64,000 nt of DNA, from the IMG/VR virus record IMGVR_UViG_3300042923_000601, positions 62,001 through 126,000 of that record. One strand, written 5' to 3'. Shown in pieces: positions 34 to 51,816 of this stretch. The notes below the pieces were generated by a model. The model was not told where the DNA came from, ran no database searches, and worked only from the letters and a program-made list of their open reading frames with translations. The translations under genes and the position numbers were made by a program. Numbering within the stretch: position 1 is the stretch's first letter; the number at the start of each line of letters is the position of its first letter.

Positions 34-2195
34 CTCCCACTGTACCGATCTCCTAAACCGAAAATCTGGTTAGTCGTACGGTCAAGCCTAACCGCTGAGC
101 GTGCATTAAGCATTGCGATCGCATTTGGTTTCATGACCTTATTCATACCATGACCATCGGTTGTGAAGATGCTTGAGTTGTGATCGTTAGCCTCCAATTC
201 CCACAGTTCCTTCTCGCTATTACGCTCTAAATCTTCTACGAAGAGAAGATCGTCGAACAGACCAGACAGGAATGGGTTATTCTTAGCTATCTTAGCGAAT
301 TTGGTTTTACGAAGGACTTTATCGAGGACATCCTCTTGGTTGTAGTCCCGTTCTTCCAGTTCATCGCCATTGAAATTATACCGATTAAACAGACCAAACC
401 GGCTAAGGTTACGCCCATAAAACATGACGTAGATACATGCCAAGTAAGCGAAGATGACGTCATCGTGCTTACCAGCTTGGTGATCGATGCGTTCTTCATT
501 CTTGTACTCCAAATAACGGAGTTGATCAACGAAGTCACGGCAAGCGATCTTTTGTTTATACTTATTGTCAGACACAAACTTCAGCAGCAGGTCCATCATC
601 TTCGGACGAGTGGCTGAGGTGACCTCATGACCATATACCAGCTTATCTTTATTCTTTGGCTTAATGACACCCTTCTTACGGCTCTCTTCAGCCAAGCGAT
701 AAGCGAAGTCATAGTACATAAAGTTCTTCAGTGGTGTGCGGAGTAAGTCTTCAATAACAGCCGAACCGACATAGTTACTTTCAATAACCAGTACAGAGTT
801 CGGGAAGTGTTCCATCATAAGCGTATATAAGAACCGCTTAAGTTCTGGAGATCGCATCGTGTTATTCTGGAACAAGGCAACCAGTTCAAGGGTTTCAGAG
901 TCTACGATCGCAACAGCAGTCGCATCCTTACCTACACCCTTCGACACGTCGACACCGACCAGGTAACGTTTAAATGGATCGATCTCTCTATATACATCTA
1001 CATAGTAGTGACCGTTGATCCGAATCGTGCGGATAGGCTCAGTTGCCATTTCAACCAGCGCTTCGATATCCTCTGCACTAAATGGAGAGTTATTCGACGC
1101 TTTATTCCACTGGAGAAGCAACTCACGACGGATTTTAACCCAGTTATTATTGAGGTTCTCACACTGCTCCGTATACCATTCCATGGTCTTACCCAGTTGT
1201 AAGAATGAGAACTTAATGTAGACCATTTTGTTGGAAGAGTTCTTCCGGAGCCAGGTCTCAACATATTCTGCGTCTTCATCATACAGGTTCTCTGTAAACG
1301 GAGCCGCATTTTTGATAAGCGTAAAGGCATAGTCACCGTGAGTTGTACCAAGGTCACCCGGTGTAGAGGTGATACATACACCGTATGGTTTGCCGTTCTT
1401 CGCCGCGTTCTCAGATGCACGAGAGAACGCTGGCATTGCGGCAGCGTGGATAACTTCATTGAACAGCATGTGGCCCAACTCGTCAAACCACAGGGATGCA
1501 ACGGTGAGACCGCGACCCGCCCGCTCTGCGTTTTGGGTGTTACGGGCAGAGGCTTTAGTCAGAATCTTATTTCCAAGACGTTTATTCTTGATTTCGTTTA
1601 CGTTGTCCGTCTGACTCTTCAGCTCACCTGTCTTTTCATCGAAATCTTTATTGAACTGGAGGTAGAGAGGAAGCAAAGCACGGCTTTCTTTTAGACGGGC
1701 CAAGTTACTTACCGACGCTGCCTTATCCATATTCATAAAGATCGTTGTGGACGAGGTGGCATTGAAGTTAAACTGCCAGAGGTAACGCTGCACGGCACCT
1801 GTCGTCTTACCGAACTGACGAGGCAGCTCTAGGTAGTGAGAGAGGTTATGTTCAAAGCACCAAGCTTGTGCCAAGTTACCCCGGTGTAGCATAAAGGGGG
1901 TACCGCCACCGATATCCGTGGAAGCACCCTCTTCGGGGATTCTGGCAATTTCACGTAGGAAGTACCAATAATTTCGAGACACTTCGACAACGACCTTACT
2001 CATTTCCGCAAAGGTAATGTCAGGATCGTAAGGATCGATATCCATCAGGTCTTTATCATACAGCTTGAGAAAAAAATCATAGTTCTTGACACCGGACATG
2101 TGTAGAAGGGTTGCAACCTTCATAAATGACATATTCGTCGTCTTCTTATGAATGTAATACTCGTCTTCCTCTAGTGTATACGGGCGAGCTAACAT
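24..2195 (-). CDS. terL: Terminase large subunit (723 aa)
   Basis: Walker A LELPRQFGKTT, Walker B LWFDELG, RNase H-like nuclease motifs YLVGVDVSKGVGKDATA and HDDVIFA; lies in the head module. Confidence 0.93.
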   Translation of the reverse strand: MLARPYTLEEDEYYIHKKTTNMSFMKVATLLHMSGVKNYDFFLKLYDKDLMDIDPYDPDITFAEMSKVVVEVSRNYWYFLREIARIPEEGASTDIGGGTPFMLHRGNLAQAWCFEHNLSHYLELPRQFGKTTGAVQRYLWQFNFNATSSTTIFMNMDKAASVSNLARLKESRALLPLYLQFNKDFDEKTGELKSQTDNVNEIKNKRLGNKILTKASARNTQNAERAGRGLTVASLWFDELGHMLFNEVIHAAAMPAFSRASENAAKNGKPYGVCITSTPGDLGTTHGDYAFTLIKNAAPFTENLYDEDAEYVETWLRKNSSNKMVYIKFSFLQLGKTMEWYTEQCENLNNNWVKIRRELLLQWNKASNNSPFSAEDIEALVEMATEPIRTIRINGHYYVDVYREIDPFKRYLVGVDVSKGVGKDATAVAIVDSETLELVALFQNNTMRSPELKRFLYTLMMEHFPNSVLVIESNYVGSAVIEDLLRTPLKNFMYYDFAYRLAEESRKKGVIKPKNKDKLVYGHEVTSATRPKMMDLLLKFVSDNKYKQKIACRDFVDQLRYLEYKNEERIDHQAGKHDDVIFAYLACIYVMFYGRNLSRFGLFNRYNFNGDELEERDYNQEDVLDKVLRKTKFAKIAKNNPFLSGLFDDLLFVEDLERNSEKELWELEANDHNSSIFTTDGHGMNKVMKPNAIAMLNARSAVRLDRTTNQIFGLGDRYSGSSW

Positions 2196-2207
2196 GGTAT
2201 ATCACCC

Positions 2208-3401
2208 TTACCCTTCGTATCCGTCAGGTACCTCAACGAAGACACCATATTTGCGCTTCGCGATCTTGGTGTCTTTAAGGATACCTGTCATCGCAACGAA
2301 CTTCTTCAGGTAATCCCAGACGATGGTATCCTTCGGATTCTTGTCCAGATACTTTTCGAGTGCAAAGATGTTATCGTAGATGCGATCAAGGACAGCCAGG
2401 CGTTCATAATTACTCGCCAGCCCGTCGATTTTGAAATTCAGGATATCCAGCTCACGCTGAAGGGCCGAATACGAGATGCGTTTATTCCCAAACTGAGAAC
2501 CGGAATCGGCTGCTTCCAAGATGGTAGAGGCCAGAGAATCAGTCTGCTTCCGCAGTTTGGTTGTAGCAGTCTCGTCCAATAGGCGATGTTCAAATGGCCG
2601 AAGGTCTTCTTCCTCCAATACCTCTGCACCGAAACGGTCTTCTTTTACCATCAGGTCAAGCCGAGGGAAGGCATTGAATACCTTGGTGTCATATTGAGCT
2701 TGCAGATAAAACATCAGTTCGTCATAGGCTCTGGTCACCTTGCGAGCTTTCTCACGAACCATTTTAACCAGATGCAGACCCATATTGGCATCAGCAATGG
2801 TTTCATTGTCCGCCATACTAAGGTTCAGATAATCAATGGATGCCATTTTTGTAAGGGCATCATTGAAATCTTCCTCAATGCCAAGGTCGATCAATAGACG
2901 GTCAGGTTCGTACATTTCTGTACCCGGAACGAGTGGAGTCTTAAACGTCCGGTTCGCAATGTCGAGGGCTGCCAAATCAACCATCTTACGGTCGAGGTTA
3001 AAGCCAGTGGTTACAACTTTACTGCTTGTAATCCGGCATGCTTTGAGCAGTGCCAGTTTAAGACGCTCGCCTACCGTAGAAGTGAGTACGTTGTGGCTGA
3101 TGTCATGGATAATCAATGCTGCCAGCTCAGAAGACGAAAATAGATCAATCGCCTGACGCTGGATTTCAATCGTATACTGCTTAGGTGTACCCCATTCACG
3201 GTTACCGTCAAGGTCAGGGTATACAACGATACCATAAAAGGAACTGGCCTTACCGGAATCGTTGATTGTCACGCTTACGCACTTTGAGGTTGGAATCTCA
3301 TTATTCAGCAGTGCGCAGATCGCCTCAACATTCTCGTATTTCTTAAACTGCTTGATTTCACTCAGTAAGTTTGTGAGCAGCTTAACAGTGTAACGGTTCA
3401 T
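2208..3401 (-). CDS. Probable virion head protein with degenerate zincin-like motif (HDISH)
   Basis: Start moved to MNRY at 3401 (AGGAGG SD). ELAALIIHDISH resembles EMVSLILHEIGH of 28148..29569. ILEA is a protease-type site. Lies between capsid and terminase. Confidence 0.55.
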   Translation of the reverse strand: MNRYTVKLLTNLLSEIKQFKKYENVEAICALLNNEIPTSKCVSVTINDSGKASSFYGIVVYPDLDGNREWGTPKQYTIEIQRQAIDLFSSSELAALIIHDISHNVLTSTVGERLKLALLKACRITSSKVVTTGFNLDRKMVDLAALDIANRTFKTPLVPGTEMYEPDRLLIDLGIEEDFNDALTKMASIDYLNLSMADNETIADANMGLHLVKMVREKARKVTRAYDELMFYLQAQYDTKVFNAFPRLDLMVKEDRFGAEVLEEEDLRPFEHRLLDETATTKLRKQTDSLASTILEAADSGSQFGNKRISYSALQRELDILNFKIDGLASNYERLAVLDRIYDNIFALEKYLDKNPKDTIVWDYLKKFVAMTGILKDTKIAKRKYGVFVEVPDGYEG

Positions 3402-3471: not shown

Positions 3472-5112
3472 TTAAGCGCCGTAGTTATCGTACAGCTCTT
3501 TGTTGTTGTGCTCGATAGTGATTTCGGCATTCACTGGGTAGTATTCCTGCGTTTTGTAGCGGCTTGCAACCATGATGGTTGGCAGCGCTGCATTGCGGCT
3601 GGAACGGTATTTGTTGGAAACGTAGTTAGCATAACGGTAGTGGTTAACCGTAATCATGTTGTTTTCGATGGAGTTAGGGATCAGGTGAACGTATACTTTA
3701 CCTGGAGGAACGCGGTCCGTGGACAGGTAGAATACAGTGTTACCAGATGTTACGACAGCGAAGTCGTATTCCATCTTAACAGCGCCAGCCATTTCTTGGT
3801 TCCGACGGAAGATGTATTCCTCACCGGAAGCGTTAGGAAGGCGGATATCCAGTGGGTTACCAACCACGCGGAAGTGGCAGTCATCCAGCTGAAGTTCGGA
3901 TTTCAAGCGAATGCACACGCGTTCGATGAACGGATGGAACTGACGTTTAATCCATTCTTCGCTACCGTATGCAAATCCAGCGTCAGGTTCGCAGTCGAAA
4001 GTTGCCTTAACGAGTGCGTCCACAGCCAGCTCTTTATGCTTAGTGAAGATGTCGATATCCTCAAGCTTCTCAACGGCGATACCCATCTGGTTAGTGTACT
4101 CTTCGAGTACATTGATACCCAGCATGCGGGAAGCGTCGTCAGTAAATTCTTGGGACAGCTCAACTTCGATATGGGTGTTATCAGGGATGTTGATGGTGTT
4201 GTTCTCATGCTCCATACCAACAACCATTGCAGCCAGGTGAGTCTCGGAAGACAGACGGGCCGAGAAGGTTACGGTTTTAACACGAGCGTCAGTTGCAGAC
4301 AGCGAAGTCACCTTGTTGGTGTTGAAATCCACGTTACCATGGATGATCGCTACCTTGTTGTCAGTACCGAATGTTACTTCGATATTGAAGTTACCGGTTT
4401 CGATGTCGATTTCACGCTTCTTGCCGGTAATTTTCAGAGCTGTAGCAGCAGTAGTACCATCGGCTTCAACTGCAGTGAAGGACTTCAGGTTGAAGTCAAC
4501 ACCCAGTTTGTTACGAGGGTCAATGCCGTTGGCAGCAAAAATGTCATACTGTGTGTTAGGAACGTTGATCGTTACGTCCAGACGATGGCGGATGTGTTGA
4601 GCCAGGTCGGAGTTCGTATTGAACGCGTCCACGAAGTACCGGCGTTTACCGGACAGGTCGATCAGATATTGTTTACGTTCAGTGATCTTGAACGATGGCT
4701 TTTCGGCTTGCAGGGTCTTGAAGGTACGGTGCATGACCGCCTTTACATAAGACCGGATTTGGAAACCGAAAGATGTCATCGAGATCGGACGCAACGCTGT
4801 CAGACCCTGTTGAGCGGATTCTTCAAGCAGTTCGTGTACAACAGCGCCCATGGCAACTGCACGCGCCTGTGCATCCTCACGGAGCACCGCGTGACGCAGG
4901 CCCTCGCCTTTGTACTGGTCAGCCTCAAGGATAGAGTTAACGGTATCCAGGAACCGCTGTGCATTAGCTTCAGTTTTGAAGATTGCCGTGGTATTGTTCG
5001 CATCGAAGCCATGGTTATAATTCTCCAACAGGCTGTCGAAAAACTTGGATACCGCGCCATCACGGGCAGTATTCTGACCCAGCGACATCTCCACAAATTC
5101 TCTTGCTGGCAT
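3472..5112 (-). CDS. Probable major capsid protein precursor (546 aa)
   Basis: Start moved to MPAREF at 5112 (AGGAGG SD; the upstream ATG lies inside a late promoter). Has its own promoter and terminator, and biased codons that give a long antisense ORF, as in highly expressed genes. N-terminal region has ILEA/LLEES sites. Sits next to terminase and prohead protease. The fold is not verified. Confidence 0.7.
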   Translation of the reverse strand: MPAREFVEMSLGQNTARDGAVSKFFDSLLENYNHGFDANNTTAIFKTEANAQRFLDTVNSILEADQYKGEGLRHAVLREDAQARAVAMGAVVHELLEESAQQGLTALRPISMTSFGFQIRSYVKAVMHRTFKTLQAEKPSFKITERKQYLIDLSGKRRYFVDAFNTNSDLAQHIRHRLDVTINVPNTQYDIFAANGIDPRNKLGVDFNLKSFTAVEADGTTAATALKITGKKREIDIETGNFNIEVTFGTDNKVAIIHGNVDFNTNKVTSLSATDARVKTVTFSARLSSETHLAAMVVGMEHENNTINIPDNTHIEVELSQEFTDDASRMLGINVLEEYTNQMGIAVEKLEDIDIFTKHKELAVDALVKATFDCEPDAGFAYGSEEWIKRQFHPFIERVCIRLKSELQLDDCHFRVVGNPLDIRLPNASGEEYIFRRNQEMAGAVKMEYDFAVVTSGNTVFYLSTDRVPPGKVYVHLIPNSIENNMITVNHYRYANYVSNKYRSSRNAALPTIMVASRYKTQEYYPVNAEITIEHNNKELYDNYGA

Positions 5113-5156
5113 ATTAATTGCCTCCTTTTCGATCCTTTGTAGTATAGGAATGGATT

Positions 5157-5168
5157 TATACATATGTT
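5157..5168 (-). promoter_or_regulatory. Late-type phage promoter AACA-N6-TA
   Basis: Minus strand reads AACA-TATGTA-TA, 45 nt upstream of the capsid ATG. Confidence 0.65.
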
Positions 5169-13232: not shown

Positions 13233-14000
13233 TTATTCGGCTTCCTCTGTAAGCTCAAGTGCTAATTCATCGTTCTTGATTGCCATTTTATATTCCTTGG
13301 ATGGAACGAAGGCAATCTTCATTGACTCACCAGCATCTCCAGGTACGATTCCTTCCAGTACATAGGTACCTTCAGGCAGGGGAAGTTTATGTGCTTCGCT
13401 GGTATTTTCCGATACCAACAGGAAGCAGATTGTACAAGCGTACACAGATACGATCACCGCAAGATCGTCCAAATTATATTGCAACCCCTCGACGATTGGA
13501 TCATTCTGAATCCATTCTTCGGTTGCTGGATCGAATACCTTGAAGTCCAGATAGTTACGTAGGACGTTCAAGTAGTCATCCCGTTCAAAGAGAACGTCTG
13601 CAAAGATATCGATCAACTGCTCGTTCACCATGTCGTGTACAGGCTTCTCAAAGAGGTGTACCGGCCAGTATTCACCAGCAGTATCTGTGGATGAGAAACT
13701 TGGTTGGAATACGATATTGTCACCCGACTCACGCTGGCTGATTTCATATGTGAACGGCCCGATTGTCAGCGAAGGTGTTGCGGAGCTATCGCCATTAGCC
13801 AGTGTCAACCGCAAGAATGTCGGGATAGACTGGGCGATTGAATGTATAATATGGTTGGTGACATCGAGCATAACCTCACGATGCTCTACACTAAGGTTGT
13901 CGAAGTCTTCTACCTTAATAGGAAGTTTCACAGAATCCTCCGTGAAACGTTTAATTCCTTTCAGCATCAGTTCGTTAAAGTAGTGGTTTTTCGTAGTCAT
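13233..14000 (-). CDS. Hypothetical protein, paralog of 11496..12200, HU/IHF-like motifs
   Basis: SD and early promoter at 14040-14050. C-terminus PEGTYVLE..IAFVPSKEYKMAIKND. Confidence 0.55.
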   Translation of the reverse strand: MTTKNHYFNELMLKGIKRFTEDSVKLPIKVEDFDNLSVEHREVMLDVTNHIIHSIAQSIPTFLRLTLANGDSSATPSLTIGPFTYEISQRESGDNIVFQPSFSSTDTAGEYWPVHLFEKPVHDMVNEQLIDIFADVLFERDDYLNVLRNYLDFKVFDPATEEWIQNDPIVEGLQYNLDDLAVIVSVYACTICFLLVSENTSEAHKLPLPEGTYVLEGIVPGDAGESMKIAFVPSKEYKMAIKNDELALELTEEAE

Positions 14001-14039
14001 AGGTGTAGCCTCCTAAATAGTATGTGTGTATTACTCTTA

Positions 14040-14050
14040 TATAATATATA
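14040..14050 (-). promoter_or_regulatory. Early-type promoter TATATATTATA
   Basis: The same motif recurs upstream of about 10 non-structural genes (see findings). Confidence 0.65.
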
Positions 14051-14082
14051 AGTAGGTTTGCTAGTATGTACTATTTCAATTC

Positions 14083-14130
14083 AAAAAAAACGTAAAAATC
14101 CCACACCGGCCATGTAATAGCCGGTGTGGG
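14083..14130 (-). terminator. Intrinsic terminator
   Basis: 11-bp stem CCCACACCGGC/GCCGGTGTGGG followed on - by U5 and U8 tracts. Confidence 0.75.
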
Positions 14131-14436
14131 TAAAATCATACGTAGTGTCACCTAACGTAGTAAGACTTCAGATTCTACTTGAGTTATCCTCCATAATCAA
14201 GTGTGGGTCAGGGCATATCAAATCACGAATGGCCTCGACGTCATAGCGCGTTTACCGTTGTAGTTCTTCAGGAGGATGCACACGGACCAACGTCATCATC
14301 CTATTCTCACCGCAAGGTAGTCATAGCGTAATGGTCTGCTCTAGCAGCTGACGATTTATAAGGGTGCACGAATGATAAGTATCCGGGACCGTAATAATTA
14401 TTTTATGAGGTGTCTCACACCAGAATCTTCCATCTT
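14090..14436 (-). ncRNA. Candidate structured non-coding RNA (~350 nt)
   Basis: Bounded by a late promoter (14436-14447) and a terminator. No ORF longer than about 15 codons from any ATG read. Several hairpins. No known RNA family recognised. Confidence 0.4.
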
Positions 14437-14445
14437 ATTAATCTG

Positions 14446-16686
14446 TTACACAGAATCAATTTTATACTTCTCAAGGAATTCAGCCAGCGTATAAATCGGT
14501 TTATTTGACTTACGCGCAGCTTTCGCCTTGGTACCACCTAACCGTTCAGGGGTCACGACAAGAATATCGTACTTCCCACTATCGGTTATCTTATAGTTCA
14601 GAGAATCGCAAATCTTGTTAAACTCATCATTTGACCGGAAGCCAGATACGAGGACAACCTTGTCGTACTTCTTATTTTCCTCGTAAGTGACGGTAATCAT
14701 CCCGCAGAGTTCGTTCCACTCGTCATATTTCTCCACGAGTGCTCGTGCAAACTTAGGGGCATTGTCCTTTATTCCCGGTACGGATGCGATAGCTTGTGTA
14801 AATTCTCTCATTGCAGGTGAATGTTCTGAGCCTGTGGATTCAGCAACCAGCGCGTTTGTCCACATGGTTGTAAACCCAAGTAACCCTAAATGATCGATGA
14901 TCTTCTTAGCTGTAGACGTCCGAAGGTTCGGAATCCGAAGAAGGTCGATCGCCTTTGAGGCTGGGAGTGGGGCTGATATTTTAGCCTGATGTTCTTCCCA
15001 TGCCTTATCTAGGTTAAGGCCCGTGAGGACTTTGGACAGGTCTTCCTTGTCCATCTCTAGGAATTTCATCGTATTTGTAATGCCAATATCAACTAGACCT
15101 TTAGCAGTTTCTTCACCGAAGAAGTCGATGCCGAATACTCGAATGGTCTCAAGTACTCGTCCAACCGCTGTACCTGGACAGTCTGGATTATCACACACCA
15201 GCATATCCTTCCGAGTAGCTAGTGGGGATTCACAGTGGATACACTTTGTTGGAAGCTTGATTTTGGCACCACTTAAATTAGGCTTACAGGTAGCATCCTT
15301 GTCGATATATCCCATGACGTCAGCGTTGTAGGATACGATGACTTCATCGCCTACCCGAAGATCGAGCCGTTCAAACCGGGTTACGTTATTGACAGGTGCT
15401 TTGTCATAGACAACCCCGTTGAATTCGATCTCATCAAATAGAATATTGTGACCCATGAACCCTTGGCGACCTTGGGTTGTCAGGATACCTTTAACATGCG
15501 TCCGCTTAACCATTGCATCAAATTTATATGCAATCTGCCAGCGGTTTTTGTTATTGGATCGACCAAGTGCTTTCCGATCTTCGCTATCGCTCAGTGTCAG
15601 TACCACACCGTCGATGCTGAAGTCCAGACTGCTACGCTTCTCGCTAACGATCTGAATGTACTCCTGAATGCGAGTAAGCAGATCATCAATATCACCATAA
15701 ATGGTCTGGATAGGTTCTGGGGTGAATTCATACGACGCCCTAGCCTTTAATCCATTCATTACAGGAACCCAGTCGACATGCTTAACCGCTTCGTCGTCTA
15801 CACCGATTGGAACCAGTGACAGACAGGACGCATAGTCGGCGAATTCCTCTTTGCTCATGGAGTCATTCCCGTAAGCTGTGACCATTCGTTTAATAGCGGC
15901 TGCAGCTGCTGCCCGTCGAGTCTTATATGTAACCCCGGTAAGCTCACTCAGCCGTTTACGGCCACTTTCCGTCACCAGCGCCTCATATTGAATCCCAATT
16001 CTCACAGGGGCAGCATAGGGAACCAGCCCGGATGGTGTAAGGAAAGGCCGTCTGTTGATTACGGTCCCCGTCATATCAACCCCGAGGTTATTAACAATAT
16101 CGCCTCTGGAAGTTGCCTTAGTGGGACGGTAGCCTTCGATGGTATCACCCGGTTTCACGTTCCCTGTAATCAGTACACAGGTTGCCGATACCGAGCTACC
16201 ATCAAACTTCAAATCAAGCGAGACGTTCAGTTTCTTCTTACCCAGCTCAGCCATAGCTCTCCGAAGGAACTTCTCGACACTCATCTTATCGCCGATGTCA
16301 TAAACATCGTACGCCTTGTCAAGTGTACCCACAAGCTCCGGGAAGTCATGAGCTACATTTCTAAGCCCTGCACTTGAACTGGATTGGAACGGTTCGTCGT
16401 GATCCTGCTTATATCTCTCCAGCATATTGTCATAGATATAGTCTGGGAGAAGCTTGATCGTCATATCACCGCCGAGTGTCCAGTTGAAATCATAGATGGC
16501 TTTACTGGCCATGATGAGGTTTGCGGCTGCCTGAATATCATCATTTGACAACCCTGCGTCATCGGACTGTGCAAACCGGACTGCAAACTCTTCAGTTTCT
16601 TTTGCGTTAATGAATCCGGCAGCGACAAGATATTTCTTATCCTGTACTGCATCCACAGCCTTTTTTGCTTTTTTGTGCGCTGACAT
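14446..16686 (-). CDS. ligA: NAD-dependent DNA ligase
   Basis: DLKFDG adenylation motif, TSRGD, IDGVV, RWQIAYKF, C4 zinc finger (CIHC..C..C), HhH region, C-terminal BRCT-like domain. Confidence 0.95.
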   Translation of the reverse strand: MSAHKKAKKAVDAVQDKKYLVAAGFINAKETEEFAVRFAQSDDAGLSNDDIQAAANLIMASKAIYDFNWTLGGDMTIKLLPDYIYDNMLERYKQDHDEPFQSSSSAGLRNVAHDFPELVGTLDKAYDVYDIGDKMSVEKFLRRAMAELGKKKLNVSLDLKFDGSSVSATCVLITGNVKPGDTIEGYRPTKATSRGDIVNNLGVDMTGTVINRRPFLTPSGLVPYAAPVRIGIQYEALVTESGRKRLSELTGVTYKTRRAAAAAAIKRMVTAYGNDSMSKEEFADYASCLSLVPIGVDDEAVKHVDWVPVMNGLKARASYEFTPEPIQTIYGDIDDLLTRIQEYIQIVSEKRSSLDFSIDGVVLTLSDSEDRKALGRSNNKNRWQIAYKFDAMVKRTHVKGILTTQGRQGFMGHNILFDEIEFNGVVYDKAPVNNVTRFERLDLRVGDEVIVSYNADVMGYIDKDATCKPNLSGAKIKLPTKCIHCESPLATRKDMLVCDNPDCPGTAVGRVLETIRVFGIDFFGEETAKGLVDIGITNTMKFLEMDKEDLSKVLTGLNLDKAWEEHQAKISAPLPASKAIDLLRIPNLRTSTAKKIIDHLGLLGFTTMWTNALVAESTGSEHSPAMREFTQAIASVPGIKDNAPKFARALVEKYDEWNELCGMITVTYEENKKYDKVVLVSGFRSNDEFNKICDSLNYKITDSGKYDILVVTPERLGGTKAKAARKSNKPIYTLAEFLEKYKIDSV

Positions 16687-17111: not shown

Positions 17112-19223
17112 TCACTTCTTCTTAGCAAGATATTCCGGCTTGAAGACCAGTCGGATATCCTTCTTGGACATGTGTGAGATGCTATCTACCACCTGATCCT
17201 TAACCGGAGTCAAATCGTTGAACTTGAACTTCAACTTAAGCCCACAGGTCAGGAATGTGGCATTAAACATGTCAACAACGCGAGAGTTATGGTTGTCCAT
17301 GTCAATTTCAAGGTCCTCTTTGAAGATGTCTACGTTAAGCAGACGGTTGAACTCGCGGCGACCTACGACCGATGTGCAATAGAGCCGGGTCATGTAGTTA
17401 ATCGCTGCTGGGTCATTACAGAGATCAAGAACGTCCATTTCCATATTACCAAGACGGATCGCCTGATTGTTAAACAGGGCTGTCCCTCTGCTATAGGCAT
17501 TGGACTTAATCGGCAGGAAGGTACGTGGATTGATTGTACCCTTCGATCTGGCTGAGAACTTTGTAATCGGTTCGTGCTTCAACCGGTATACATAGGTCGG
17601 AGCCACAATAACCTTACGCTGGATCGTTGAAGTCGTACCGTCTGGGTTCTTAAGGATCAAACGGGACTTCTTCGGATCAAACTTCTCAATCAACTTCTGA
17701 TAATTCTTAAAGCTGACGCTGTGTTCAGCCGATTGGAAGATGACGAAATCCTTTGTGATTTCAGCCAAGAACTGCTTGCGCTCATCGGCTTTCAGGGATT
17801 CATACATCCGTTCAACCTGCTTACCTTGCTTTGGATTAACCAGCGCGAGGAAGTCAAGAATCCCCTCGTACTTCTTCTTCGGAGATTCATCACTGTTCAG
17901 AATCTGATCCATAATCCAGTTTTCTTCGTGCTCACTCGACTGTGCAGGGTTGAGCCGCCCAACCATACTAAGCGCGTTGTATTCGATCTCAATATGCTTC
18001 CCAGTCTTCTTGTCGATAGGCATCATGTCGTCAGGGACGATCTCACTGATAACCCCCTTGTTACCAAACCGCCCAACCAGCTTAGAGCCTTGCTTCACTT
18101 TGGATGTGCTGGCTACTGTAATAACGATAATCATATTGTCGAACACTGAAGACATCTCCGTATTCCACCGGGTATGTTTACCGATACTCAAAGCATCCTT
18201 TGCACGAGCGTAATAGATACCCATCGTGTCGGAGTAGCTATTCTTCGGGTCAGATGATATCTCTTCGACTGTGTCACGAATCTCTCTCCAGAAATTTGTG
18301 ATCGAGTCCAGATACCAGTTTACCTGCTTGTGGGCAGCGTCAGTTGGAAGCTCATCGTGCGGGGTATTGCAATAGATGTCAATATCAACAACACGGGAGC
18401 ATGGGCTACTTTCTGTTACGTACGTTGTATCCCCGAACCTACGCTCTCTAAGGTTCTTATTCTTCAAACCGTAGAGGGCATTGCTATAATCCACACGCCG
18501 CCGTGCTACCAGAATTCGATCCTTTACCTTTTCACCGATATCAGGAAACGCTTTATACGACCCAGTGTTGCCGCCGTACAGGTTAAGGAAGATATCGTTA
18601 TTATTCTTAGGGATGGTAAACTGATCGACCGATGTTGTTTCTAGCTTAGTCCGCAGCGATTCCGAAATGCGAAGCGCATCCTCAACTAGAGCAACGTCGG
18701 ATAGATAGGCTGTTTCTGCATTCACGCCGAGGCGATAGTTCATATCGTCATCATATGCGTTCGATTTATACACAACATCGCCTTTCTTGATCGTAGAACC
18801 CACTTTCTTGGAGTCCATATACTCATTATTGATAAGAGTACCGCTAGATTCAGCGAAGGATTCCACTTCATTTCGAACGAGTAGGTCATATCGGTTGCTG
18901 TTCTTATCCTTTACGACAAGAACGTATACCATATCACTACCCTTGAACTTCTGAATCTTCTTCACAATCTCATAGTTCTTGTCTGCCTTCTGAAAAGAAG
19001 TTGACCGGTCGCCGTACATTTTCTCCCACCCTGTAGACATGCGGGCGATCTCCGGATTATTAAGATTCTTAGCCTGTGGTATTTGAGAATATACCATCGC
19101 GGCCCGAGATGAGTTAACGTGATTGGCAAGCGGTGTCATCAGTCCGCTACCATACACATAGTCCATGTTCTTGATGCCTGCAGCTATTCGGTGCAAGTCC
19201 TCCATCTGTTCGGGTTTAATCAT
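17112..19223 (-). CDS. RNA polymerase beta subunit, C-terminal part (probably non-virion RNAP)
   Basis: NHVNSSRAAMVYSQ, GSKLVGRFGNKGVIS, YRLKH, RLGNMEMDVL (RpoB DPBB and C-terminal motifs). Early promoter at 19293-19303. Confidence 0.92.
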   Translation of the reverse strand: MIKPEQMEDLHRIAAGIKNMDYVYGSGLMTPLANHVNSSRAAMVYSQIPQAKNLNNPEIARMSTGWEKMYGDRSTSFQKADKNYEIVKKIQKFKGSDMVYVLVVKDKNSNRYDLLVRNEVESFAESSGTLINNEYMDSKKVGSTIKKGDVVYKSNAYDDDMNYRLGVNAETAYLSDVALVEDALRISESLRTKLETTSVDQFTIPKNNNDIFLNLYGGNTGSYKAFPDIGEKVKDRILVARRRVDYSNALYGLKNKNLRERRFGDTTYVTESSPCSRVVDIDIYCNTPHDELPTDAAHKQVNWYLDSITNFWREIRDTVEEISSDPKNSYSDTMGIYYARAKDALSIGKHTRWNTEMSSVFDNMIIVITVASTSKVKQGSKLVGRFGNKGVISEIVPDDMMPIDKKTGKHIEIEYNALSMVGRLNPAQSSEHEENWIMDQILNSDESPKKKYEGILDFLALVNPKQGKQVERMYESLKADERKQFLAEITKDFVIFQSAEHSVSFKNYQKLIEKFDPKKSRLILKNPDGTTSTIQRKVIVAPTYVYRLKHEPITKFSARSKGTINPRTFLPIKSNAYSRGTALFNNQAIRLGNMEMDVLDLCNDPAAINYMTRLYCTSVVGRREFNRLLNVDIFKEDLEIDMDNHNSRVVDMFNATFLTCGLKLKFKFNDLTPVKDQVVDSISHMSKKDIRLVFKPEYLAKKK

Positions 19224-19306: not shown

Positions 19307-20617
19307 TTAATCAAAATCTACCCAGCCAAGCTTCTTAGCTTCCTCAACGTCGCGCTGATGATCTTCAAGAGCCAGATACATAGCGTCAAGACGTTGACTG
19401 GATGTTTCCTCTGCACCGCGACCAGTGTCAGTAGACAGCATGGATTGCAGTGAAGGCAGAGCGGCTTCAACCAAAGCCATCATAACTTCCGGATCGCGCA
19501 GGGCGACTTCTTCAAACGTTTTACGGGTGAACCGTGTGCGTTGAAGACCCGGGATGAATAACTGCGTGCTTGGACCTTGAAGTAAGCCCAGCTGGTGTAC
19601 ATAATGAAGCAGCGTCAGCGCTTTGGAGAATCCACCGCGACGTTGGTCGAAGATCATTTCGATTGGCACATTAGACGCGTTTGTACGAGATTTCAGCATA
19701 CGGGCTTCAGCAATGAATCCCGGGATACCATACTCACACTTGTCCGACTTGCTCATATCGAACTTCTTGAGAACCTTGAGTTTAATGATGTTATTCGCCA
19801 AATACAAGCTCGCCGAACCACCCGGCATCGACTCGTCCTGAGTCAAATACATATGCTGGGATGGCTTAGGCAAGAAGCCTGTGTTAACGTTAGGGTTAAG
19901 ATGGTTGACACAGTTCAAGGATACGTTGGCTGTTTTGCCATATCCAATCATCTGAGTCAGTACACCTTTATTGAACTTTGCGGACTGTGCTGCGATCATG
20001 TTATGCGTTACGTTATCAACCGTTGTGTCCTTCTTGGACAGGTCAATATCTTCCGACTTAAACATGGCAAGCGAGTCCAGCAAAACAGCGGACGGGTAGT
20101 ACTCCCAGATGTCTTCGTTGTATAGATTCTTGACCCCGGTATTATAGTAGTACTCTTTCCGGTTGTCAATCTTAACCTTACAGTGGTCGGCAAACATGTC
20201 AACCACCGTTTCAGCACCGCGTTCCCGGTACATTTCATACGTATTACGCAGAAGTGATGGAGGGATACGCAGTATCTTCATCGGACGCTGCATGGTGGAT
20301 GCCATTTCAAGGTCATGATGCTGTACTGCTGACATATCGCCAAATTTATGGATACCGGATGCTGACAGCTCAATAGCCAGCGCCGATTTACCTGTACCCG
20401 ATAGGCCAATTGTAGTGGTCATGGTGCCATTTACCAGACCAATCAGGTCAGTATACCCAGTTGGTCGGTCGTATTCGTCATACGCTGTTACCCGGACCCC
20501 GTTTGCGTAGTCGAGCGGTAGGAACCCAGAGGGAGTCGAAATCTCCGTAACAATTTGATTACTTGCACCCTTTTTCTTGCCTTTTCGTTCGTCACTTACC
20601 TTCGATAATAGGGACAT
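19307..20617 (-). CDS. uvsX: RecA/UvsX-like recombinase
   Basis: Walker A GLSGTGKS, Walker B LLDSLA, VNHL and PGGSASLYLA motifs of the RecA fold. Confidence 0.85.
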   Translation of the reverse strand: MSLLSKVSDERKGKKKGASNQIVTEISTPSGFLPLDYANGVRVTAYDEYDRPTGYTDLIGLVNGTMTTTIGLSGTGKSALAIELSASGIHKFGDMSAVQHHDLEMASTMQRPMKILRIPPSLLRNTYEMYRERGAETVVDMFADHCKVKIDNRKEYYYNTGVKNLYNEDIWEYYPSAVLLDSLAMFKSEDIDLSKKDTTVDNVTHNMIAAQSAKFNKGVLTQMIGYGKTANVSLNCVNHLNPNVNTGFLPKPSQHMYLTQDESMPGGSASLYLANNIIKLKVLKKFDMSKSDKCEYGIPGFIAEARMLKSRTNASNVPIEMIFDQRRGGFSKALTLLHYVHQLGLLQGPSTQLFIPGLQRTRFTRKTFEEVALRDPEVMMALVEAALPSLQSMLSTDTGRGAEETSSQRLDAMYLALEDHQRDVEEAKKLGWVDFD

Positions 20618-35821: not shown

Positions 35822-36199
35822 TCTGTACTCCTCCTCATAGTTTCACTACTCCCATATAGAGAGATTAGTATTGGTGGTGAGCATATCAATGTCCCATACA
35901 CTACTATAATATATCATTGCGTGGCGATATGGGATAGAGATACACTTAGAACTCATTGAGTTGTTAAGAGACGATTTATTTCCTACATTTGCATGTCACC
36001 GCCTCCTTATGTGTCGAATCATTGGTGTTGTTACTCATCGATATAATATATAAGTCAAATTAATAACGCCACTGCAATTAAGCAGTGGCGTTACAGGGAG
36101 GATGGCAGGAGCCCGATGGCGGACCGCTGTATGCGTCGTCAGGGGGGACGAAATTGCAAGGCGGCATTGGCTCAATTACTTGTTAAGAGTAATAATAAT

Positions 36200-51183: not shown

Positions 51184-51349
51184 AGTTATAACAATCCTTT
51201 CTATATCGATTTATGGAATGTTTAAGTAAAAAGACTATCTCCCCCCTTAATAGAGAAGATAGTCCTAAAGATATGTATATGATAAATAAACTCGAACTTC
51301 TTTTAAGTATTCAAAATTTAACGGGTCCTTCCAGGAGGGGGTTTCACCT

Positions 51350-51545
51350 GTCTTTATTCTTTTAACCCTTTCTATTTTGTATCTATTATTTCTATCTCCT
51401 AGCTCCGCTTTTCTTTCTCTCTCCCCTTCGGGGATCTATCTTTCTTAACCCTTTTTATTATCTCTATTCTATTCCTCTTTTCTATCTCTCCGTTTTGTTT
51501 CTTTCTTTCACTATCCCGACCACCCGCCCCTCTGTCTCTGCCTGT
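51350..51545. repeat. Polypyrimidine/polypurine tract with imperfect ~85-bp tandem repeat
   Basis: The + strand is mostly C/T and very G-poor. TTAACCCTTT(C/T)TATT units start near 51362 and 51445. Confidence 0.7.
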
Positions 51546-51816
51546 AATGATTTGTTACTATGATATATTTTTATAACTATCAATCCCATTATTTAGCAGA
51601 ATAGAGCCTACATTATAATATAGTCATACATAAATCATTTAATTACTGGGAGGTTTTGTGTTAAGGTAGCTGAAGGCAGAATAACCCATTAGATTAATGC
51701 GGTGTTTGTTTATATAAACGTATGGTCAACTAAATTATTTTGAAACGTACATACTTATGACCTAAGTTATATATTATAATCATGTAATCAAACCCACTAT
51801 ATAGGAGGAATTATTA

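What the first reader, a model, noticed from the sequence alone, without database searches (positions are those of the whole stretch)
14083..14447. Candidate late non-coding RNA with its own promoter and terminator, and a GGAGG-loop hairpin
Seen: an exact late promoter overlaps the ligA stop (predicted +1 at 14436), followed by about 345 nt with only very short ORFs and a strong terminator. Hairpins include CTTGA-TTAT-[GGAGG]-ATAA-C-TCAAG (14201-14178), GGATG..CATCC and TACGT..ACGTA, and CGCTATGAC occurs twice. It lacks tRNA, tmRNA and RNase P signatures. Known: CsrA/RsmA binds GGA in hairpin loops, and Bacillus CsrA represses flagellin translation. Inference: a structural RNA, an SD/CsrA decoy, or a virion/packaging RNA.
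Basis: partly seen in the sequence, partly recalled or inferred. Interest (0 to 1): 0.65.

Follow-up and report, generated by a model that had tools for sequence, protein, structure and literature searches.

The report
Structured late RNA after phage ligase
The gene-free stretch after the DNA ligase gene of this uncultivated AR9-like giant phage most likely encodes a folded RNA of about 340 bases, in no RNA database, with its own late promoter and terminator; relatives carry a counterpart, its function is unknown, and the proposed GGAGG/CsrA decoy role is not supported.

Summary
The window is part of a 246.7-kb AR9/PBS1-like jumbo phage from soil. An AR9-type late promoter (AACA-N6-TA, +1 at 14436) overlaps the ligA stop. 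About 340 nt without an ORF follow, then a 14-bp terminator with a T run (14130-14083), then an AR9-type early promoter for the next gene.

Fourteen distinct loci (ligase 43-57% identical; one found through the neighbouring gene) keep this layout. Thirteen of the 14 have the exact late motif.

A covariance model built only from three relatives finds window 14250-14322(-) as its only significant hit (E about 5e-4). In five sequences that arm is 90% paired, with compensatory changes in 15 of 22 pairs. The predicted 5' end pairs with +240 to +285. A sister clade has its own well-covarying about 330-nt RNA at the same place; homology between the clades is not shown.

Rfam and ARAGORN (tRNA, tmRNA) find nothing. 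A near relative carries frame-breaking indels.

So a discrete structured non-coding RNA is well supported by sequence; no expression data exist. Only the GGAGG pentamer is conserved. Function is unknown.

The parts
14436..14447 (-). AR9-type late promoter AACA-N6-TA. AACA is 14447-14444 and overlaps the ligA stop; the predicted +1 is A14436.
   Evidence: Sequence read. Consensus from PMC5312081. The motif is 3.7-fold enriched upstream of ORFs in this genome. It is present at the same place in 13 of 14 related loci.
14083..14436 (-). Predicted non-coding transcript, about 340-354 nt.
   Evidence: No ORF of 25 aa or more lies wholly inside on this strand. A roughly 94%-identical contig has indels of 1, 2 and 3 nt. 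From +1 to the end of the terminator stem is 300-384 nt in the twelve loci where the automatic scan found a clear terminator.
14422..14436 (-). P1, 5' strand (transcript nt 1-15).
   Evidence: Pairs with 14162-14176 in the minimum-energy fold. Duplex energy is -19.0 kcal/mol; 0 of 1000 shuffles and 0 of 180 other windows reach it. Equivalent helices exist in L105, L106 and L107 and, from the scan, in L004, L005, L007, L112 and L118.
14162..14176 (-). P1, 3' strand (transcript nt 261-275).
14334..14352 (-). P2 hairpin (CUGC-UAGA-GCAG core), inside the block best conserved with L145.
   Evidence: That alignment block is 23 of 25 identical with L145. A hairpin stands at the same transcript position in L105-L107 with different sequence.
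14250..14322 (-). Arm M: a long irregular hairpin with a conserved internal loop (5' GAGAA 14308-14304, 3' AAGA 14268-14265) around a covarying hairpin (14303-14269).
   Evidence: Covariance model R2, built from L105-L107 only, gives this as its single significant hit: 23.2 bits, E 5.4e-4 in 164 kb. Across five sequences 90.1% of cells are paired, 15 of 22 pairs have changes on both sides, 0 of 500 shuffles reach this, and slid controls give about 41%. The motif starts at +122 to +129 in four of the RNAs (WIN, L105-L107).
14177..14202 (-). The pentamer is conserved; the hairpin is not.
   Evidence: GGAGG lies at +212 to +245 in all five RNAs. The hairpin is absent in L145. In L105-L107 GGAGG is predicted paired with a 5' CU-rich strand.
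14139..14159 (-). Small 3' hairpin TACGTTAG/CTACGTA, in the poorly conserved 3' third.
   Evidence: A 94%-identical contig has indels at 14135-14153. Identity with L145 is about 42% over alignment columns 201-325.
14083..14130 (-). Intrinsic terminator: stem-loop 14130-14100 followed by the T-rich tail 14099-14083.
   Evidence: 14 pairs, 9 G-C. Local hairpin energy -25.9 kcal/mol. A hairpin of -18.6 to -25.9 kcal/mol with a T-rich tail was found at the same place in 11 of the 14 related loci.
14240..14248 (-). Second copy of CGCTATGAC (the first is at 14328-14320). Judged to be chance.
   Evidence: 16% of shuffles hold an exact repeat of 9 nt or more. The repeat is not kept in L145.
14034..14053 (-). 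Boundary feature, not part of the RNA: AR9-type early promoter ACTTATATATTAT-N6-G for the next gene (13233-14000).
   Evidence: Consensus from PMC5312081. The core TATATTAT is 10.7-fold enriched upstream of ORFs. It is present before the next gene in 13 of 14 related loci.
14446..16686 (-). Upstream neighbour: NAD-dependent DNA ligase gene (746 aa).
   Evidence: Pfam PF01653, with weaker matches to PF03120 and PF14520 below their cut-offs. tblastn matches to ligases of AR9, PBS1 and phiR1-37.

Best explanation
Proposal: 14436-14083(-) is a self-contained transcription unit for a structured non-coding RNA of about 340 nt.

Shown by sequence analysis:
- It begins at an AR9-type late promoter and ends at a strong intrinsic terminator.
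- It has no conserved reading frame.
- Its 5' end pairs with nt +240 to +285 (helix P1), which closes the molecule.
- Inside are a short hairpin (P2) and a long arm (arm M). The arm's purine-rich internal loop, GWGAA opposite AAGA, is conserved, while the helices around it covary.
- A GGAGG pentamer at +212 to +245 is conserved in all five members of the subfamily.
- The same layout sits after ligA in every relative recovered.

Inferred:
- The phage's non-virion RNA polymerase makes the RNA late in infection. ligA read-through may add to it earlier.
- The paired ends and the terminator hairpin make it stable.
- It acts in trans as a protein-binding scaffold or decoy. The conserved internal loop and the GGAGG element would be the recognition sites. 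The fast-changing 3' third would be mostly spacer.

The partner and the purpose are unknown.
For: Phage type:
- The non-virion RNA polymerase beta subunit is 35% identical to those of AR9 and PBS1.
- The AR9 early and late promoter consensus sequences (PMC5312081) are 10.7-fold and 3.7-fold enriched upstream of ORFs in this genome.

Conserved layout:
- Fourteen distinct loci have a gap of 405-593 nt at this place.
- Thirteen of the 14 have an exact AACA-N6-T[AG] at its start, and 13 of the 14 have the early core at its end.

An independent module:
- In L005, ligA has its own terminator upstream of the RNA promoter.
- In L118, an ORF is inserted between ligA and the RNA, and the promoter stays with the RNA.
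- In L145, two tandem terminators follow the RNA and a glycosyltransferase gene separates it from the 255-aa gene.

Homology:
- Model R2, built without the window, hits 14250-14322(-) at E 5.4e-4. It also hits L145 at E 1.5e-4.

Structure:
- Arm M is 90% paired, with 15 of 22 pairs compensatory and 0 of 500 shuffles as good.
- Many G-U pairs fix the strand as '-'.
- P1 beats the shuffles in all four RNAs tested.
- The sister clade's RNA has 76 predicted pairs, 29 of them with compensatory changes.

Non-coding nature:
- There are no ORFs.
- A 94%-identical contig has indels of 1-3 nt.
- Against L145 the alignment has frame-breaking gaps, whereas the flanking genes show third-position bias of 91/46/279 differences by codon phase.
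Against: - There is no expression evidence. No RNA run holds this sequence, so the start site, the 3' end and the late timing are all inferred from motifs.
- The late motif is short: 195 copies in the genome.
- The structural evidence for the window's own subfamily rests on five sequences, and the alignment used for the pair counts was fitted to the model.
- The sister-clade model R1 does not detect the window. Clade-wide homology therefore rests on position, size and architecture only.
- P1 is weak in the closest relative L145 (-13.4 kcal/mol, no better than shuffles).
- For the region between P1 and the junction, the window's local hairpins and a long inter-strand stem have about the same energy.
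- Nothing identifies a binding partner. The neighbouring genes have no recognisable function.
Confidence: 0.6

Rival explanations
1. Late 5' leader or attenuator. The late promoter at 14436 serves the downstream genes (13233-14000 and beyond). The structured 340 nt plus terminator form a regulated premature-termination leader, riboswitch-like or protein-controlled. The short RNA is its by-product.
For: In AR9, continuously expressed genes have both an early and a late promoter in front of them, and 5' UTRs reach 491 nt (PMC5312081). Here the order is late promoter, structured RNA, terminator, early promoter, gene. Most small RNAs reported in jumbo phage 201phi2-1 are 5'-UTR premature-termination products (PMC11512511). 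In the window, nt 14-21 could pair with the 5' half of the terminator; I checked this by hand on the sequence.
Against: No known aptamer class matches. The possible anti-terminator pairing is not kept in L145, where GGTGTG becomes GGCCGG. L145 has two tandem terminators and a different gene, a glycosyltransferase, after the RNA. P1 closes the 5' end onto the 3' part, as in stable RNAs. The terminator is very strong (-25.9 kcal/mol).
Confidence: 0.13
2. SD or CsrA decoy. The RNA titrates CsrA or 30S subunits through GGAGG displayed in a hairpin loop.
For: GGAGG lies at +212 to +245 in all five subfamily members, against 0.26-0.62 expected per RNA. The phage relies on strong SD sequences: 96 of 248 crude gene calls have GGAGG at -22 to -4. 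In the window the pentamer sits in a 5-nt loop on a stem of 9-10 pairs.
Against: The hairpin is specific to the window. L145 lacks it, and in L105-L107 GGAGG is predicted to be base-paired. There is one site per RNA (a second copy in L105 and L145), whereas known sponges hold many. GGA is not enriched (6 against 4.9). The host, and whether it has CsrA, are unknown.
Confidence: 0.07
3. Passive ligA 3' UTR. The stretch is a spacer plus the operon terminator, and the late motif is fortuitous.
For: The terminator would end ligA transcripts in any case. The late motif is only six specified bases and overlaps the stop codon, so part of it is constrained by coding.
Against: The motif is kept where it does not overlap the ligA stop (L145, L107, L003, L004, L007, L111-L113). 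It is also kept where ligA has its own terminator (L005) or where another ORF intervenes (L118). P1 starts at the predicted +1 in WIN, L105 and L107 and at +3 in L106. Covariation shows selection on the fold.
Confidence: 0.05
4. DNA-level element (replication origin, iterons) or a tiny protein gene.
For: The stretch lies in a replication and recombination module: UvsX-like recombinase, ligase and a polymerase-like protein. It holds a repeated 9-mer. A short ATG ORF starts at +4 (11 aa in the window, 13 aa in L145).
Against: The repeat is chance and is not conserved. Compensatory changes that include G-U pairs point to a single-stranded RNA of the - strand. A 1-nt indel shifts the +4 ORF between the window and L145, and L105 has no ATG there.
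Confidence: 0.04

Closest known systems
AR9 late transcription units (Lavysh et al. 2017, PMC5312081)
   Same: The promoter grammar is the same: late AACA-N6-TA/G with the last base as the start site, and early AAATATATATTAT-N6-G. Both motifs are enriched upstream of genes in this genome.
   Different: The passages of the AR9 study read here describe no such non-coding unit. In AR9, a gene follows ligA within about 45 nt on the opposite strand, leaving no gap. phiR1-37 and Staphylococcus phage PALS_2 have no gap either.
Jumbo-phage small RNAs defined by a start site closely followed by a terminator (201phi2-1 sRNA005 and its phiKZ, EL and PA3 counterparts; PMC11512511)
   Same: They are phage-polymerase transcripts bounded by a promoter and an intrinsic terminator. 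They are conserved by genomic position among related giant phages, have a conserved predicted fold, and their function is unknown.
   Different: Those were selected as units under 250 bp, and most derive from 5' UTRs. This one is about 340 nt, lies between a ligase gene and an early promoter, and belongs to a different phage lineage. Sequence homology to them was not tested.
CsrB/RsmY-type CsrA sponge RNAs
   Same: One GGA-containing loop in the window copy.
   Different: Sponges carry many GGA loops. Here GGA is at the expected frequency and the loop is not conserved. No Rfam match.
phi29 pRNA (packaging RNA)
   Same: A phage-encoded structured RNA that acts as part of a protein machine.
   Different: Rfam reported no family here, pRNA included if it holds one. 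This RNA is about twice the size of pRNA (about 174 nt, from my own knowledge). It lies in a replication module rather than next to packaging genes. No loop-loop complementarity was looked for.
Stable bacterial RNAs with paired termini (6S, SRP and RNase P RNAs)
   Same: The 5' and 3' regions pair to close the molecule, there are long irregular helices with conserved internal loops, and a terminator hairpin sits at the 3' end.
   Different: No match to any of these Rfam models at E up to 10.

Membership tests
AR9-type late transcription unit | AACA-N6-T(A/G) promoter, with the last base as the start site | tested here: met
   Exact match at 14447-14436. The motif is enriched upstream of ORFs and conserved in 13 of 14 loci. 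Whether the promoter is active was not testable.
AR9-type late transcription unit | Transcript detected late in infection | not testable with these tools
   No RNA run holds the sequence.
Intrinsic terminator | G+C-rich hairpin followed by a T run | tested here: met
   14 pairs, 9 of them G-C, then ATTTTTACGTTTTTTTT. Energy -25.9 kcal/mol.
Structured non-coding RNA (generic) | Conserved secondary structure supported by compensatory changes in homologues | tested here: met
   Arm M has 15 of 22 pairs with changes on both sides, and 0 of 500 shuffles reach this. P1 is supported in WIN, L105, L106 and L107. Only five sequences were available.
Structured non-coding RNA (generic) | No conserved reading frame | tested here: met
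Any Rfam 15 family (tRNA, tmRNA, RNase P, 6S, SRP, riboswitches, ribozymes, GOLLD/ROOL) | Covariance-model score at or above the gathering threshold | tested here: not met
   Nothing at gathering score in the whole window. Nothing inside the RNA at E up to 10 in 13500-15000. Nothing at the RNA position in the relatives that were scanned. ARAGORN finds none.
CsrA-binding sponge RNA (CsrB/RsmY type) | Multiple GGA motifs displayed in hairpin loops | tested here: not met
   6 GGA against 4.9 expected. One GGAGG loop, and it is not conserved in L145.
Sister-clade post-ligA RNA (L002, L003, L004, L005, L007) | Match to covariance model R1 (201 positions, 66 pairs) | tested here: not met
   No hit at the locus, with default filters or with filters off. 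Position, promoter, terminator, size and overall layout (paired ends enclosing a short hairpin and a long arm) are shared. The window RNA is therefore a positional counterpart whose homology is unproven.
Window subfamily (L105, L106, L107, L145) | Match to covariance model R2, built without the window | tested here: met
   23.2 bits, E 5.4e-4, the only significant hit in 164 kb. L145 scores 24.3 bits.
Riboswitch or attenuator leader | Alternative anti-terminator pairing conserved among homologues | tested here: inconclusive
   A possible 8-bp pairing of nt 14-21 with the terminator's 5' half exists in the window (my reading), but it is lost in L145. This was not examined systematically.

The most novel reading that the evidence does not exclude
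A whole clade of uncultivated AR9-like jumbo phages carries, always just after ligA, a fast-evolving structured late RNA of about 330 nt. It would be an essential trans-acting ribonucleoprotein component or decoy. One possibility is that it engages the translation apparatus through its invariant GGAGG. Another is that it neutralises a host defence, which would explain why everything except a small core changes quickly. The three sequence groups found here would be one ancient family.
Probability: 0.25. Interest if true: 0.8.

Novelty: new variant of a known kind. Interest (0 to 1): 0.6.

Why it matters
Structured phage RNAs of this size are rare, and few have a known function. This is a new family, absent from Rfam. 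It has clear boundaries, a defined conserved core, and natural variants in at least five, and by position fourteen, giant-phage genomes. Those phages use their own multisubunit RNA polymerases. The family gives a concrete target for asking what non-coding RNAs do late in jumbo-phage infection. It also gives a compact test substrate for late promoters and terminators of AR9-type polymerases. The main limit is that no member comes from a cultured phage.

Tried and rejected
- DNA search of the phage collection with the region found no match.
- The first viral-contig pattern scan was mis-specified by one base, and its 25 loci are chance. The corrected scan gave 71 loci, but model R1 confirmed only the five known sister-clade RNAs and their duplicates.
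- R1 against the window and against L105-L107 gave nothing at the locus, with or without filters.
- A strict pattern taken from the window and L145 arm found no further copy in viral contigs.
- The metagenome scan with the ligase alignment added only duplicates and more distant ligases.
- mafft-qinsi was not usable, so structural alignment outside arm M was done helix by helix.
- The genome search on the window's own genome with R2 missed the true site in its first look and gave only a weak hit elsewhere, E 0.59. I set that result aside.
- No RNA sequencing run was found. The contigs laid on the region showed indels, but most substitutions inside the RNA were not listed.
- Pfam, PHROGs and the ESM Atlas gave no function for the neighbouring 255-aa gene.
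- Considered and rejected: the repeated 9-mer as iterons (chance); a CsrA sponge; the 11-aa ORF at +4 (frame not conserved). A K-turn, C/D-box or hammerhead reading of the GWGAA/CUGAAGA loop does not fit the consensus registers by my own inspection, and Rfam has no match.
Full report
**Context.** The window is bases 62001-126000 of a 246,689-bp virus record that CheckV rates as complete. DNA runs that hold it come from soil, and a relative of about 94% identity comes from silage. Genes around the finding lie on the - strand. They include a UvsX-like recombinase (19307-20617) and a split RNA-polymerase beta-like subunit (17112-19223, PF00562). That subunit is 35% identical to the non-virion polymerase subunit of Bacillus phages AR9 and PBS1. 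A 114-aa ORF follows, then an NAD-dependent ligase (14446-16686), the gap, and several ORFs of unknown function. The phage is therefore a distant, uncultivated relative of AR9. The DNA of the region matches nothing in the phage collection.

**The observation.**
- AACA-gattaa-TA lies at 14447-14436, overlapping the ligA stop.
- No ORF of 25 aa or more lies wholly within the transcript on its own strand.
- A 14-bp terminator stem (14130-14100) is followed by a T-rich tail down to 14083.
- The three hairpins and the two CGCTATGAC copies are present.

The published AR9 consensus is AACA-N6-TA/G for late promoters and AAATATATATTAT-N6-G for early ones (PMC5312081). In this genome the late motif is 3.7-fold enriched, and the early core 10.7-fold enriched, within 120 nt upstream of ORFs. 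The phage very probably uses the same promoter grammar. Just past the terminator sits a near-consensus early promoter (14053-14034) for the next gene. The gap is the fourth largest gene-free stretch in a genome that is 92% coding. The 9-mer repeat is not significant, because 16% of shuffles hold one. The fold energy z-score is -2.5 on either strand, which decides nothing.

**Relatives.** I collected related loci by three routes:
- ligase-based searches of viral contigs, metagenome contigs and the large protein collection;
- one lookup through the 255-aa neighbour;
- these gave fourteen distinct loci with ligases 43-57% identical.

All have a gap of 405-593 nt at this place. Thirteen of the 14 have an exact late motif at its start, and L005 has AACA-N6-CG. 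Thirteen of the 14 have the early core at its end. In eleven of them the automatic scan found a strong hairpin (-18.6 to -25.9 kcal/mol) with a T-rich tail. From +1 to the end of the terminator stem is 300-384 nt in twelve loci.

Three rearrangements show that the unit is independent of its neighbours:
- In L005, ligA has its own terminator, and the RNA promoter lies about 170 nt further on.
- In L118, a 174-aa ORF separates ligA from the RNA, and the promoter stays with the RNA.
- In L145, the RNA is followed by two tandem terminators and an inserted glycosyltransferase gene.

Cultured relatives AR9, phiR1-37 and PALS_2 have no such gap.

**Structure in the sister clade.** In L002, L003, L004, L005 and L007 the gap holds a strongly conserved element. 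RNAalifold gives 76 pairs, of which 29 show compensatory changes. A covariance model of its core (R1) recovers only those five sequences and their duplicates. It does not detect the window or its closer relatives, even with filters off. Homology between that RNA and the window's RNA is therefore not demonstrated.

**Structure in the window's own subfamily.** The window, L105, L106 and L107 share one conserved block: GWGAAKAG, a hairpin, then CTGAAGA. It starts at +122 to +129 from the predicted start in all four.

- Model R2 was built from L105-L107 only, with a structure I specified. It gives window 14250-14322(-) as its only significant hit in 164 kb on both strands: 23.2 bits, E 5.4e-4 with rough calibration. 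This is an independent test of homology, and the window passes.
- R2 also finds L145 (24.3 bits), the closest copy available.
- In the five-sequence alignment, 90.1% of cells are paired. Fifteen of 22 pairs have changes on both sides. No shuffle out of 500 reaches any measure. Sliding the partners drops pairing to about 41%. The alignment was fitted to the model, which favours the structure, but the margin is large.
- Frequent G-U pairs fix the strand as '-'.
- The first 25 nt of each predicted transcript pair with +240 to +285. Energies are -19 to -26 kcal/mol, better than every other window of the same RNA and better than 968-1000 of 1000 shuffles. The helix begins at +1 in three of the four and at +3 in L106. 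This supports the predicted start site.
- Comparable 5'/3' pairing appears in L004, L005, L007, L112 and L118. It is weak in L145.
- Minimum-energy folds of L105, L106, L107 and L145 show a long irregular stem formed by the 5' and 3' thirds. That stem closes a junction holding the short hairpin P2 and arm M. In the window, this stem and a set of local hairpins have about the same energy.

**Non-coding nature.** Against L145 the RNA is 61% identical with frame-breaking gaps. The first 200 alignment columns are 71.5% identical, with blocks of 84-92%. Columns 201-325 are about 42% identical. The flanking genes are 72-74% identical, with differences of 91/46/279 by codon phase, the usual coding signature. 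A contig about 94% identical has indels of 1, 2 and 3 nt between 14082 and 14214. A short ORF at +4 changes frame between the window and L145. It is absent in L105.

The core claim, a non-coding RNA with its own late promoter and terminator, is supported. The decoy idea is not:
- The 9-10-bp hairpin with GGAGG in its loop lies in the fastest-evolving part and is not kept in L145.
- In L105-L107 the GGAGG is predicted to pair with a CU-rich 5' strand.
- GGA is at chance frequency.

What does hold is that a GGAGG pentamer lies at +212 to +245 in all five RNAs, against 0.26-0.62 expected per RNA. This is modest evidence, noticed after the fact, that the pentamer itself matters. The phage relies on strong SD sequences. 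An interaction with the 16S 3' end therefore cannot be excluded, but nothing tests it here.

**Mechanism.**
- Shown: the boundaries, the conservation, the fold of arm M and P1, the strand, and the lack of coding.
- Inferred: late synthesis by the non-virion polymerase, stability from paired ends, and trans action through protein binding at the conserved purine-rich internal loop and at GGAGG.

The main rival is a late leader with regulated premature termination for the downstream genes. AR9's habit of placing both promoter types before one gene fits that reading, and so does the origin of most 201phi2-1 small RNAs. Several points weigh against it. No known aptamer class matches. The candidate anti-terminator is not conserved. 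L145 has tandem terminators. The downstream gene is interchangeable.

**Known relatives and novelty.** Rfam 15 has no match at the RNA position in the window or in the scanned relatives. ARAGORN finds nothing. The nearest known kind is the set of jumbo-phage small RNAs that are bounded by a start site and a terminator and conserved by position (PMC11512511). This RNA is larger, intergenic, from another lineage, and better supported by covariation. I file it as a new family within a known kind. Interest is moderate to high for phage RNA biology. It is limited by the lack of expression data and of a cultured host.

Noticed in passing
L002:6087-6440, L003:6236-6580, L004:6110-6455, L005:6435-6775, L007:3899-4245: The sister clade carries a strongly conserved structured RNA of about 330 nt at the same post-ligA position. 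Conserved blocks include TCTTTGAAAAACT, CTCGGATTTTTCT and GTGAAGAG..CTTGCTGAAGT..CAGAAAGAG. It has 76 predicted pairs, 29 of them compensatory. It is not in Rfam and is not detectably homologous to the window RNA.
   Followed up: yes
L145:1582-1960: This is the closest copy of the RNA. It is followed by two tandem terminators, and a glycosyltransferase gene (2030-3262) is inserted before the homologue of the 255-aa gene.
   Followed up: partly
L118:5656-6180: A 174-aa ORF made of internal repeats is inserted between ligA and the RNA unit. The late motif overlaps the stop of this ORF instead of the ligA stop.
   Followed up: no
window 14078-14089: In a strain about 98% identical (run X2), contigs break here and continue with unrelated sequence. 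This is a mosaic joint immediately after the terminator's T run.
   Followed up: no
G000:C1:155886-156148 (outside the window): A second gap has the same layout on the - strand: a late motif, then about 190 nt later a -18.7 kcal/mol hairpin with a T run, then the early core. It is another candidate short late RNA.
   Followed up: no
window 35822-36199 and 51184-51816: Two other large gene-free gaps. The first holds two late and two early promoter motifs on the - strand. The second is a 633-nt divergent region with promoter motifs on both strands and a strong hairpin.
   Followed up: no
window 14034-14053 and genome-wide: The AR9 early-promoter core TATATTAT occurs 39 times in the genome, and 25 of those lie within 120 nt upstream of ORFs. 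The early-promoter grammar of AR9 therefore holds in a phage of about 45% G+C whose polymerase subunit is only 35% identical to AR9's.
   Followed up: partly
window 3472-5163: A 563-aa ORF on the - strand is shadowed over almost its whole length by a 544-aa ORF on the + strand (3508-5142). This is probably a compositional artefact.
   Followed up: no
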